A DNA stretch of 63,641 nt, counting the filler, from Octopus bimaculoides (lineage: Eukaryota), in NCBI RefSeq assembly GCF_001194135.2. It is 5 parts of 4 records of this genome, joined end to end, with 100 filler letters (N's around TTAATTAATTAA, not from the genome) between each part and the next. Parts side by side here need not be neighbours in the genome. Positions count along the whole stretch, not along the records: positions 38,151 to 48,913 come from NC_068984.1; 4 more parts are not named here. One strand, given 5' to 3'. Shown here piece after piece: positions 38,457-39,519 of this stretch. The translations under genes were made by a program, and so were the position numbers. Within the stretch, counting starts at the first letter, position 1; the number at the start of each line of letters is the position of its first letter. The notes beneath the pieces were generated by a model that ran no database searches, was not told the origin of the DNA, and saw only the letters and a program-made list of their open reading frames with translations.

Positions 38457-38696
38457 GTCGTCTGCTATAAAGGCGTCACTACAATCTAATTATAAATCTC
38501 ACAGAGAGAATTAAGCAACTGTGTTACGATAAAGCAGTTGTATACTGTCAACTTAATGTGACAGTCCCAATAAGGGAAGCATACTGCCGCTATTTAGCCC
38601 TAAGAAGCTGGAGCGCTTCCTGTCGGCCTTGACACATTTCCTGTGTCCTTATACTTGCGAGGGGGAGACAAGCAACCCCACCCAGCCTAGTCTGCA

Positions 38697-38739
38697 TTCA
38701 GGGACATGTTTCTGAGGCATTGCTCGTCATCAGCCTGAA
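38697..38739 (-). ncRNA. Minimal type I hammerhead ribozyme motif
   Basis: Minus strand reads UUCAGG-CUGAUGA-C-GAGCAAUGCCUC-A-GAA-ACAUGU-C-CCUGAA. Perfect 6-bp stem I, palindromic helix III, GUC cleavage triplet. Confidence 0.8.
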
Positions 38740-39519
38740 GTAGCAACACTAGCTGGCTATATATGTATATTGAAGGAAAGAAAATGGAGAAAAATGGATG
38801 TATGAATAATTAGTTTGTATATTATGAAATGTTGAAAATTTCTTTTAAAAACATAGCAGCACAAATAAATTGATTACAAGTTGTAAAGCTCGAAAAAATA
38901 AAATAATAGAACCTACATTTATGTTTCAGTACTATCTCCGAGTTAATCAGAAATTCAAAGCATTTGGTTAAATGCTAAGAATGGTATTATATTCTAACTA
39001 TATGGGGTAGGGCTTCTTCAGGGTTATTATGAGCTTATAGAGCTTAGGTTATCATTTTTCCTTTGAAGGATGCATACAGAGTATTAGTGAGTTTAAGAAG
39101 TTAAATGCTATATGTAATAAGTGTATCTAGGTGGTGAGTTATAGATATTCATATCTTTATATATATATATATATATTCTTTTATTCTTTTACTTGTTTCA
39201 GTCATTTAACTGCGGCCATGTTGGAGCACTACCATGAAGGGTTTTAGTCGAAAACATCGACCCCCAGGATTTATTACTTATGCCTAGCACTTATTCTATC
39301 GGTGTCTTTTGCCGAACCGCTAAGTTACGGGGACGGAAACACACCAACACCGGTTGTCAAGCGGTGATGGGGACAAACACGCACAAACGCGCGCGCGCGC
39401 GCACGCACACACGACGGGCTTCTTTCAGTTTCTGTCTACCAAATCCACTCACAAGTAGTTGGTCAACACGAGGCTGTAGTAGAAGACATTTGCCCAAAGT
39501 GGAGGAGGAAAAAGAATAG

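What the first reader, a model, noticed from the sequence alone, without database searches (positions are those of the whole stretch)
38540..38760. Diverged second family with the same hammerhead-plus-multi-hairpin module, showing compensatory base changes
Seen in sequence: the hammerhead at 38697-38739 has the same odd N-stemII-A-GAAA geometry and is followed on the minus strand by a homolog of repeat X. Hairpins are kept although the sequence differs: GACACA-GGAAA-TGTGTC vs GGCACA-GATG-TGTGTC; CCC-TTATT-GGG vs CCC-TTA-GGG; CTGTCA-CATTAAGT-TGACAG vs GCCAC-ATTTAA-GTGGC (GCCGC in the 51-kb copy, a G-U wobble). A GGGCTAAA(T)AGC motif is also conserved. Inference: a conserved structured RNA domain downstream of the cleavage site, possibly an RT-recognition, circularisation or stability element of a retrozyme or pseudo-LTR class. 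I do not recognise it as a named family.
Basis: partly seen in the sequence, partly recalled or inferred. Interest (0 to 1): 0.8.

Follow-up and report, generated by a model that had tools for sequence, protein, structure and literature searches.

The report
Solitary Penelope-type hammerhead module in octopus
This is one roughly 213-bp copy of the hammerhead-ribozyme end piece that Penelope-like retrotransposons leave in animal genomes, a known kind of element, and the claim that its downstream hairpins are conserved through compensatory changes could not be tested because no second copy could be obtained.

Summary
The minus strand of 38697-38739 holds a real minimal type-I hammerhead. It has a CUGAUGA...GAAA core, a 6-bp helix I, a GUC cleavage site (cut between 38703 and 38702) and a palindromic ACAUGU helix III, which implies it acts as a dimer. 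This is the type described for Penelope-like elements (PLEs). Two of them fold better than shuffled sequence, but the 162-nt tail as a whole does not (z = -1.35).

The GC profile and CpG content mark out a compact element of about 213 bp (38544-38756) in TA-rich DNA. An AT-rich spacer separates it from a CpG-island-like promoter (38176-38450), which is probably a host feature.

The piece contains no RT open reading frame, no second copy and no tandem partner. No other copy turned up in 113.5 kb of octopod DNA or in any collection I could search. The comparison with "repeat X" and the compensatory changes are therefore unverified.

The extra A before GAAA is absent from five Poseidon-type PLE hammerheads. 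It is present in a bona fide PLE that I found in a metagenome contig (L032).

Verdict: a new member of a known kind, of modest interest.

The parts
38544..38756 (-). Whole element as inferred, about 213 nt: leader, hammerhead and hairpin tail
   Evidence: A GC-rich block (0.46-0.56) is bounded by a sharp drop to 0.14-0.32 above about 38757 and by an AT-rich trough (0.30-0.36) at 38451-38550. CpG o/e is 0.39 here, against about 1.05-1.1 in 38151-38550. Both flanks are TA-rich...ACATATATAG| and |TATACAAC. The boundaries are inferred from one copy only.
38740..38756 (-). 17-nt leader (CCAGCUAGUGUUGCUAC) between the upstream (TA)-rich flank and helix I
   Evidence: Read from the sequence. The 5' limit is set by the GC drop.
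38697..38739 (-). Minimal type-I hammerhead. Helix I is 38734-38739 paired with 38697-38702. CUGAUGA is at 38727-38733. Unpaired C is at 38726. The helix II hairpin is 38714-38725 (3 bp, GAG/CUC). Extra A is at 38713. GAAA is at 38709-38712. The palindromic CAUG is at 38705-38708. UC is at 38703-38704. The predicted cut lies between 38703 and 38702.
   Evidence: ACAUGU is self-complementary, and the dimer is predicted at -22.8 kcal/mol against 2 x -8.0 for monomers. There is no Rfam hit.
38659..38683 (-). Imperfect G-rich/C-rich hairpin (GGGUGGGG...CCCCCUC). Its GUUGCUUGUC can instead pair with the UGACGAGCAA of the hammerhead.
   Evidence: duplex -11.4 kcal/mol. On its own it is no better than shuffles (z = -0.08).
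38631..38647 (-). AC-rich hairpin GACACA-GGAAA-UGUGUC, starting 55 nt after the cut. Candidate RT initiation or recognition stem-loop, by analogy only.
   Evidence: z = -5.3, 0 of 200 shuffles. The analogy is with the AC-rich stem-loop of the anole PLE (PMC11167929).
38596..38628 (-). Hairpin with a 7-bp inner stem AGGAAGC/GCUUCUU and an outer stem GGCC/GGCU. The outer 3' arm is the start of the GGGCUAAAUAGC motif.
Evidence: Present in the MFE and centroid structures. z = -1.1 on its own.
38589..38600 (-). GGGCUAAAUAGC motif
   Evidence: Present as quoted. The claimed conservation in the other family could not be checked.
38566..38576 (-). 3-bp hairpin CCC-UUAUU-GGG
   Evidence: It is too short to mean much alone.
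38544..38565 (-). 3'-terminal 7-bp hairpin ACUGUCA-CAUUAAGU-UGACAGU
   Evidence: Together with the CCC hairpin, z = -3.0, 2 of 200 shuffles. It lies at the inferred 3' end of the element.
38451..38543 (-). AT-rich spacer that is not part of the element. It contains a weak CAACUG/CAGUUG hairpin at 38516-38540.
   Evidence: GC is 0.30-0.36. The hairpin has z = -0.26.
38176..38450 (-). CpG-island-like promoter and non-coding first exon, probably a host feature. It has two NRF1-like GCATGCGC palindromes (38414-38425, 38369-38380), ETS-like CCGGAAG and CAGGAAGT sites (38397-38406, 38385-38392) and a GTGAGC splice-donor-like site at about 38186.
   Evidence: CpG o/e is about 1.05-1.1. The transcription-factor reading rests on my own knowledge of consensus sites and was not tested.

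Best explanation
This is a solitary copy of the terminal module of a Penelope-like retroelement, or of a short non-autonomous element that PLE enzymes copy. It lies on the minus strand at about 38544-38756. It consists of a 17-nt leader, a minimal type-I hammerhead and a 159-nt tail of four or five hairpins. The hammerhead has almost no helix III of its own. Its ACAUGU is self-complementary, so two copies (in a tandem transcript or in trans) must pair to build the active ribozyme, which would cut after C38703. Published work on the anole PLE shows reverse transcription starting inside the RNA, in a stem-loop 85-92 nt downstream of the hammerhead cut, and proposes that the RT binds in that region. 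Every DNA copy of such an element, however 5'-truncated, would therefore end with 'hammerhead plus tail'. That is what is seen here. By that analogy the tail hairpins are the template-recognition and initiation region for the RT. The most likely candidates are the AC-rich GACACA hairpin and the 3'-terminal hairpin. The copy inserted into TA-rich DNA, which is the known target preference. It happens to lie about 100 bp upstream of a CpG-island promoter that is not part of it. Shown: the motif, the hairpins, the boundaries by base composition, and the lack of an ORF or partner. Inferred: mobilisation by a PLE, the role of the tail, and self-cleavage itself.
For: The hammerhead core, 6-bp helix I and palindromic helix III are present, and the pattern is unique in the window (0.03 expected by chance). 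The features match the published PLE min-HHR description: a nucleotide between A9 and 10.1, a palindromic 15.2-16.2 and action as a dimer (PMC4209133). The same A-GAAA-CAUG-UC variant sits in the terminal repeat of contig L032. That contig encodes an 843-aa RVT_1 + GIY-YIG ORF with 32% identity to the anole PLE protein. Its unit is 6196 nt long, and its copy ends 67 nt after the cut. For the anole PLE, the RT-binding motif is proposed to lie in the first 172 nt after the junction, and RT starts in an AC-rich stem-loop (PMC11167929). In this element an AC-rich hairpin starts 55 nt after the cut and has z = -5.3. The compact GC-rich block has TA-rich flanks. CpG content differs from that of the neighbouring promoter block. 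The piece is octopod DNA, because its SINEs match Octopus vulgaris copies at 70-83% identity, and cephalopods carry PLEs (PMC8557442, PMC6962438).
Against: There is no RT/GIY-YIG remnant in the 10.7-kb piece, and no second copy or pLTR partner. Membership of a PLE family therefore rests on the ribozyme type alone. Helix II has only 3 bp, against 6-7 bp in the PLE hammerheads I examined, and an A lies between helix II and G12, so the ribozyme may be weak or dead. The tail as a whole folds no better than shuffles (z = -1.35). The boundaries come from one copy.
Confidence: 0.55

Rival explanations
1. This is the 5' pseudo-LTR of a longer, possibly full-length PLE that runs off the piece. On this reading, the hammerhead module, the AT-rich stretch, the CpG-rich block with promoter motifs and the splice-donor-like site are all one element: an internal promoter and a 5'-UTR intron, as in Drosophila Penelope. 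The ORF would lie beyond 38151.
For: Penelope and Chlamys-3 carry their TSS, internal promoter and a 5'-UTR intron in or next to the pLTR (PMC8557442). The promoter-like block is on the same strand and only about 100 nt downstream of the module. The piece ends 546 nt after the cut, so an ORF could not be seen.
Against: An AT-rich trough (GC 0.30-0.36) separates the two GC-rich blocks. CpG o/e is 0.39 in the module against about 1.05-1.1 in the promoter block, which suggests different histories. NRF1- and ETS-type sites with an ATG-less first exon look like a housekeeping host promoter (my reading of the motifs). In L032 the ORF follows the tail within about 50 nt, with no such block in between.
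Confidence: 0.2
2. This is a monomer of a non-LTR retrozyme, a short non-coding repeat that is transcribed from tandem arrays. The hammerheads cut the transcript into unit-length RNA, which is ligated into a small circle and copied back into DNA by a PLE RT. The 'tail' is then simply the rest of the circle, and its hairpins give the compact self-paired fold typical of such circles.
For: The unit size of about 213 nt is within the published 170-400 nt range, and the ribozyme is a type-I hammerhead with a weak palindromic helix III (PMC7229834). Monomeric derivatives are common, and retrozymes derive from PLE pLTRs (bioRxiv 10.64898/2026.07.22.740005). The predicted MFE fold pairs part of the hammerhead with the tail, as in ribozyme-bearing circles where the ribozyme is masked.
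Against: There is no tandem partner or partial second unit. The local alignment of leader plus hammerhead against the downstream sequence is no better than shuffles (407 of 500 reach it). The hammerhead lacks the loop 1/loop 2 architecture of the classical retrozyme ribozymes and looks like the PLE minimal type. No expression data are available.
Confidence: 0.15
3. This is a dead relic or a partly fortuitous arrangement. The hammerhead-like motif is a decayed or inactive copy, and the hairpins are ordinary local self-complementarity with no selected function. Any similarity between families reflects common descent only.
For: Helix II has only 3 bp, with a C and an A flanking it. The hammerhead alone has z = -0.39. 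The tail has z = -1.35. With G-U pairs allowed, the hairpin count is not significant (P = 0.085). The module is CpG-depleted, which is compatible with an old copy.
Against: The full set of core nucleotides, a 6-bp helix I in register, a GUC site and a palindromic helix III together are very unlikely by chance. The same variant occurs in a real PLE (L032). Two hairpins are individually far more stable than shuffles.
Confidence: 0.07

Closest known systems
Minimal hammerheads of Penelope-like elements (Cervera & de la Pena 2014, PMC4209133)
   Same: Type I ribozyme with a CUGANGA...GAAA core. It has an unpaired nucleotide between A9 and helix II, a G-C closing pair on helix II, and essentially no helix III, with palindromic 15.2-16.2 so that two copies form the active dimer. 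It is scattered mostly as single copies from truncated elements.
   Different: Helix II here has 3 bp, against the 6-8 bp described and the 6-7 bp in the five examples I looked at (PAc; L041-L043). An extra A lies between C11.1 and G12. The palindrome is ACAUGU rather than ACGU. No PLE ORF is linked within the visible 10.7 kb.
PLE in metagenome contig L032 (JAAUYH010178102.1), found here
   Same: The ribozyme variant is identical in layout: helix II, then A-GAAA-CAUG-UC. It sits in a terminal repeat that ends a short distance (67 nt) after the cut.
   Different: L032 has the 843-aa RT + GIY-YIG ORF, a 4-bp helix II without the 5' unpaired base, an extended helix I, and a tail with no sequence similarity to this one. 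Its host organism is unknown.
Poseidon_Ac (PAc) of Anolis carolinensis (Frangieh et al. 2024, PMC11167929)
   Same: A hammerhead is followed within about 100 nt by an AC-rich stem-loop. The authors propose that the RNA just downstream of the hammerhead holds the RT-binding motif, and reverse transcription starts there. This explains why copies end in 'hammerhead plus tail'.
   Different: In PAc the tail is the start of the ORF, whereas here no reading frame stays open. The PAc ribozyme has a U before a 6-bp helix II and no extra A. Function was shown for PAc and is only inferred here.
Non-LTR retrozymes of metazoans (Cervera & de la Pena 2020, PMC7229834; Li et al. 2026 preprint)
   Same: A short (about 170-400 nt) non-coding unit with one type-I hammerhead. 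These are derived from PLE pLTRs, and monomeric copies exist.
   Different: The defining tandem arrangement is absent here. Circular RNA could not be tested.

Membership tests
Hammerhead ribozyme (type I, PLE minimal form) | Conserved core C3-U4-G5-A6-N7-G8-A9 ... G12-A13-A14 ... A15.1/U16.1-H17 | tested here: met
   CUGAUGA at 38727-38733, GAAA at 38709-38712, UC at 38703-38704.
Hammerhead ribozyme (type I, PLE minimal form) | Helix I formed by the sequences flanking the motif, open-ended | tested here: met
   UUCAGG pairs with CCUGAA, 6 contiguous Watson-Crick pairs. Chance matches to the core mostly have 0-2.
Hammerhead ribozyme (type I, PLE minimal form) | Helix II closed by G10.1-C11.1 directly next to the core, with at most one unpaired base on the 5' side | tested here: inconclusive
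   The G-C closing pair and the 5' unpaired C are present. However, the helix has only 3 bp and an A separates C11.1 from G12. Five Poseidon-type PLE hammerheads lack this A, and L032 has it.
Hammerhead ribozyme (type I, PLE minimal form) | Palindromic 15.2-16.2 / loop 3 that allows a dimeric helix III | tested here: met
   ACAUGU is self-complementary. The duplex is -4.6 kcal/mol, and the predicted dimer is -22.8 against 2 x -8.0 kcal/mol for monomers.
Hammerhead ribozyme (type I, PLE minimal form) | Self-cleavage | not testable with these tools
   This needs in vitro transcription of monomeric and dimeric constructs.
Rfam hammerhead families (RF00163, RF00008, RF02275-7) | Score at or above the family's gathering threshold | tested here: not met
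   There was no hammerhead match even at E <= 10 on 650 nt. As a control, the genuine PLE hammerhead of L032 reaches only 17.9 bits against 52 for HH9.
Penelope-like element (pseudo-LTR) | Repeat flanking an ORF with telomerase-like RT and a GIY-YIG endonuclease | tested here: not met
   tblastn of the PAc protein against the piece gave no hit. No ORF of at least 70 aa looks like an RT. No repeat partner exists. The piece ends 546 nt downstream of the cut, so that side is unseen.
Penelope-like element (pseudo-LTR) | Insertion into AT-rich or (TA)n DNA | tested here: met
   The flanks are ...CAATATACATATATAG| and |TATACAAC, and GC is 0.14-0.32 upstream. The target preference is described in PMC8557442 and PMC11167929.
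Penelope-like element (pseudo-LTR) | Common 3' end ('tail') a fixed distance after the hammerhead, with variable 5' truncation | not testable with these tools
   This needs many copies, and only one is available.
Non-LTR retrozyme | Head-to-tail tandem units, each with a hammerhead | tested here: not met
   One hammerhead and no second unit.
Non-LTR retrozyme | Unit-length circular RNA | not testable with these tools
   No transcriptome data can be searched by nucleotide sequence here.
No homologue could be retrieved.

The most novel reading that the evidence does not exclude
The 159-nt tail is a genuine, selectively maintained RNA domain shared by two diverged octopus hammerhead families. It would be the template-recognition and initiation signal for a cephalopod PLE reverse transcriptase, coupled to a hammerhead sub-type with an inserted A between helix II and G12. 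That sub-type would mark a distinct PLE lineage, also seen in contig L032.
Probability: 0.25. Interest if true: 0.5.

Novelty: new member of a known kind. Interest (0 to 1): 0.3.

Why it matters
How PLE reverse transcriptases recognise their RNA is known for only one element, the anole PAc. If the tail is a conserved, covarying domain next to the hammerhead in a mollusc lineage, it would be a second, independent example of the recognition signal. It would also provide a search model for non-autonomous PLE derivatives in cephalopod genomes. The hammerhead variant with an A inserted before G12 and a 3-bp helix II would be worth a cleavage assay, because that position sits next to the general base of the ribozyme. 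As it stands, the locus is an ordinary solitary copy of a known class of repeat.

Tried and rejected
I made nine attempts to find other copies or related features. None yielded a second copy.

1. Fishing by protein. I sent a 282-aa concatenate of all stop-free six-frame translations of 38489-38809 to the 5.8-billion-protein search. It returned no hit at E <= 10.

2. Exact look-up of ten ORFs of the piece, in the hope of extending the locus beyond 38151. None is in the collection.

3. DNA pattern scans.
   - Viral contigs returned 22 hits, none with more than 3 helix I pairs, which served as a chance control.
   - Metagenome contigs returned 16 hits, and only L032 was informative.
   - Prokaryote genomes and viral contigs, scanned with module-specific patterns, returned zero hits.

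4. Looking for a linked PLE. The PAc protein (from the supplement of PMC11167929) gave no tblastn hit in the piece. A database search with its RT domain returned lizard and insect PLEs only, with no cephalopod among the 120 hits shown.

5. Getting octopus DNA indirectly.
It brought the real Octopus vulgaris and O. bimaculoides loci.
   - A SINE-encoded ORF of the piece brought six more octopod proteins and their loci.
- This gave 113.5 kb in all.

6. Testing for a degenerate second unit downstream of the module. The local alignment was no better than shuffles, so I rejected this.

7. Testing whether the tail was once the N-terminal coding region of a PLE ORF, as in PAc. No frame is open and nothing resembles the PAc N-terminus by eye, so this is unsupported.

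8. Looking for a pol III A/B box reading of the leader. The match is poor and the spacing wrong, so I dropped it.

9. The many Rfam microRNA 'hits' in the piece fall on (TA)n/(CA)n microsatellites, all below threshold. They are artefacts.

Full report
**What is in the sequence**

Only 38151-48913 is real sequence. On the minus strand, 38739-38697 reads UUCAGG CUGAUGA C GAG-CAAUGC-CUC A GAAA CAUG UC | CCUGAA. This has every invariant nucleotide of a hammerhead core. It also has a 6-bp open-ended helix I (type I), a GUC cleavage triplet with the cut predicted between 38703 and 38702, and a helix III reduced to A-U and C-G around AU. The six nucleotides ACAUGU are self-complementary.

A relaxed core pattern matches once in the window, against 0.03 expected by chance. 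I ran the core pattern over viral and metagenome collections as a control. Nearly all of the 38 matches had 0-2 contiguous helix I pairs, so the 6-bp helix in register is not a by-product of the pattern.

Rfam finds no hammerhead here, even at E <= 10 on 650 nt. That negative result carries little weight. A hammerhead in a demonstrable Penelope-like element (L032, below) scores only 17.9 bits against a threshold of 52.

**The ribozyme type**

The layout matches what Cervera and de la Pena described for Penelope-like elements (PLEs): a minimal type-I motif, an unpaired nucleotide between A9 and helix II, a G10.1-C11.1 closing pair, palindromic 15.2-16.2 and action as a dimer (PMC4209133).

The A between helix II and G12 is not mentioned in that paper. 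It is absent from the five Poseidon-type PLE hammerheads I examined. These are the anole PAc and examples from lamprey (two motifs), a spider and a JGI metagenome eukaryote. All five read N + 6-7 bp helix II + GAAA-CG-U[C/U].

The A is not unique to octopus, however. Metagenome contig L032 carries CUGAUGA-GUGC-AACUAA-GCAC-A-GAAA-CAUG-UC. That contig encodes an 843-aa ORF with RVT_1 and GIY-YIG domains and 32% identity to the PAc protein. A 59-nt direct repeat, 6196 nt apart, is exactly the sequence following the hammerhead cut. The A-GAAA-CAUG-UC form is thus a variant used by at least one real PLE lineage.

In the octopus copy helix II has only 3 bp. Activity is therefore uncertain and would in any case need a second copy. 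The predicted homodimer is -22.8 kcal/mol, against -8.0 kcal/mol per monomer.

**The tail**

- GACACA-GGAAA-UGUGUC at 38631-38647.
- CCC-UUAUU-GGG at 38566-38576.
- ACUGUCA-CAUUAAGU-UGACAGU at 38544-38565.
- The GGGCUAAAUAGC motif at 38589-38600.

Folding adds a 7-bp hairpin, AGGAAGC/GCUUCUU, with an outer GGCC/GGCU stem that uses the start of that motif (38596-38628). It also adds an imperfect G/C-rich hairpin at 38659-38683.

Against dinucleotide shuffles the results are mixed:
- The GACACA hairpin has z = -5.3 (0 of 200 shuffles).
- The last two hairpins together have z = -3.0 (2 of 200).
- The whole 162-nt tail has z = -1.35 (17 of 200).
- The other hairpins are unremarkable.
- Perfect hairpins of at least 6 bp number 3, against 0.35 in shuffles (P = 0.024). 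With G-U pairs allowed, P = 0.085.

There is therefore some excess of local structure, but no strong single-sequence case for a folded domain.

**Extent and neighbourhood**

A fine GC profile shows two GC-rich blocks, 38551-38750 and 38176-38450. They are separated by an AT-rich trough at 38451-38550, and GC collapses to 0.14-0.32 above about 38757.

CpG o/e is 0.39 in the first block and about 1.05-1.1 in the second. The second block has two GCATGCGC palindromes, CCGGAAG and CAGGAAGT sites, no ATG, and a GTGAGC donor-like site near 38186. From my knowledge of consensus sites, I read it as a CpG-island promoter with a non-coding first exon on the minus strand.

I therefore place the element at about 38544-38756 (about 213 nt), between ...ACATATATAG and TATACAAC. 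It abuts the promoter but does not include it. This is an inference from one copy.

The piece is octopod DNA. Its SINE copies align to SINEs in the Octopus vulgaris rhodopsin locus at 70-83% identity.

**What is not there**

The piece has no RT or GIY-YIG remnant (tblastn with PAc; ORFs). It has no second copy or pLTR partner on either strand. It has no degenerate second unit downstream.

**The comparison with "repeat X"**

This comparison is the heart of the finding, and I could not test it. The other copies lay in pieces I was not given.

I tried to obtain copies in several ways:
- A six-frame protein query.
- Exact ORF look-ups.
- Pattern scans of viral, metagenome and prokaryote collections.
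- Indirect retrieval of 113.5 kb of octopod genomic DNA through rhodopsin and SINE-encoded ORFs.

One of those loci (L046) does hold a different PLE, with its own hammerhead-like motif in 5.2-kb-spaced repeats. This shows that PLEs with terminal ribozymes occur in octopods.

- An A-U to G-U change in hairpin 1.
- No change in the CCC/GGG stem.
- One U-A to C-G double change in the last hairpin.
- One further G-U in a variant copy.

That is one compensatory event and two wobble-compatible ones in about 14 pairs, with no disruptions. This is suggestive, but far too little for a covariation claim.

**Mechanism**

Frangieh et al. showed in vitro that the anole PLE needs the first 172 nt after the pLTR-ORF junction in its RNA template, and they propose that the protein binds there. 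The RT starts internally, in an AC-rich stem-loop 85-92 nt past the hammerhead cut. Genomic copies end at those start sites, and the hammerhead is protein-assisted and dispensable for insertion (PMC11167929).

On that model every copy, including extreme 5' truncations and non-autonomous derivatives, ends in "hammerhead plus tail". L032 shows the same architecture, with a 67-nt tail. The octopus module fits. It has an AC-rich hairpin 55 nt after the cut, a terminal hairpin at the inferred 3' end and TA-rich flanks.

I therefore favour a solitary PLE-derived terminal module whose tail serves RT recognition (0.55). The rivals are:
- The 5' pLTR of a longer PLE that includes the promoter block (0.20).
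- A non-LTR retrozyme monomer (0.15). Such elements are themselves pLTR derivatives according to bioRxiv 10.64898/2026.07.22.740005.
- A functionless relic (0.07).

**Novelty**

The class (PLE hammerhead, pseudo-LTR or retrozyme) and the idea of an RT-recognition region just downstream of the ribozyme are both published. I found no paper describing hammerhead elements in octopus specifically. The giant squid genome paper only counts 235 Rfam hammerhead hits.

The locus is thus a new member of a known kind. It carries a mildly unusual ribozyme variant and an untested, possibly interesting tail.

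Noticed in passing
window 38176-38450 (minus strand): CpG-island-like block (CpG o/e about 1.05-1.1) with two NRF1-like GCATGCGC palindromes, ETS-like CCGGAAG and CAGGAAGT sites, no ATG, and a GTGAGC donor-like site near 38186. It looks like a housekeeping-type promoter and a non-coding first exon of a gene that runs off the piece at 38151.
   Followed up: partly
window 38720-38729 and 38667-38676 (minus strand): The hammerhead's UGACGAGCAA can form a 9-bp duplex (-11.4 kcal/mol) with GUUGCUUGUC in the tail. 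The MFE fold of the whole module uses it instead of the ribozyme fold. It could be an 'off' conformer. A match of this size is not rare by chance (rough expectation about 0.3).
   Followed up: partly
window 39179-39501 (+), 39695-39854, 48573-48913: Copies of an octopod SINE, each with an internal (CA)/(CG)/(TA) microsatellite. They are 70-83% identical to copies in the Octopus vulgaris rhodopsin locus (L039). This identifies the piece as octopod DNA.
   Followed up: yes
window 42179-42256, next to the N run 42016-42152: Degenerate interstitial telomere-type repeats (TTAGGG/TTAGAG...) directly after an assembly gap. A 68-nt inverted repeat (41945-42012 / 42279-42346) brackets the gap.
   Followed up: no
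window 45512-45608 and 45923-46019; N run 45834-45922; 44341-44441 and 45733-45833: An exact 97-nt duplicate and a 93% identical 101-nt repeat lie around an assembly gap. This looks like a gap-closure or tandem-duplication artefact of the assembly.
   Followed up: no
window 47900-48130, 44190-44390, 39530-39600: (TA)n/(CA)n/(GAA)n microsatellites produce dozens of sub-threshold Rfam 'microRNA' matches (mir-297, mir-3149, mir-466 and others). These are artefacts of low-complexity palindromes.
   Followed up: yes
L032 (JAAUYH010178102.1) 1-6518, minus strand: A PLE unit of 6196 nt from an unknown eukaryote in a metagenome. The terminal repeat carries the hammerhead. The 843-aa RT + GIY-YIG ORF is preceded by a 352-aa ORF and followed by ORFs of 153 aa (C2H2 zinc finger) and 311 aa before the next hammerhead. 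This is unusually long and multi-ORF for a PLE.
   Followed up: partly
L046 (GCA_054771915.1, BAAFZT010000006.1) 13981-14250 and 19196-19465: A 270-nt direct repeat (94% identity), 5215 nt apart, flanks a PLE RT remnant (16403-17003). Each repeat holds CUGAAGA-UUUUUAAUAAA-GAAA-CGCG-UU with a 6-bp helix I and ends in a (TA)n tract about 65 nt after the putative cut. This is a different hammerhead-bearing PLE in an octopod-like genome.
   Followed up: partly
P0122 (JGI) and P0156 (ENA): Cephalopod-type rhodopsins (77-78% identical to octopus) occur on contigs filed as metagenomes. Host cephalopod DNA is therefore present in those collections. A better-aimed DNA pattern might retrieve squid PLE modules there.
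   Followed up: no
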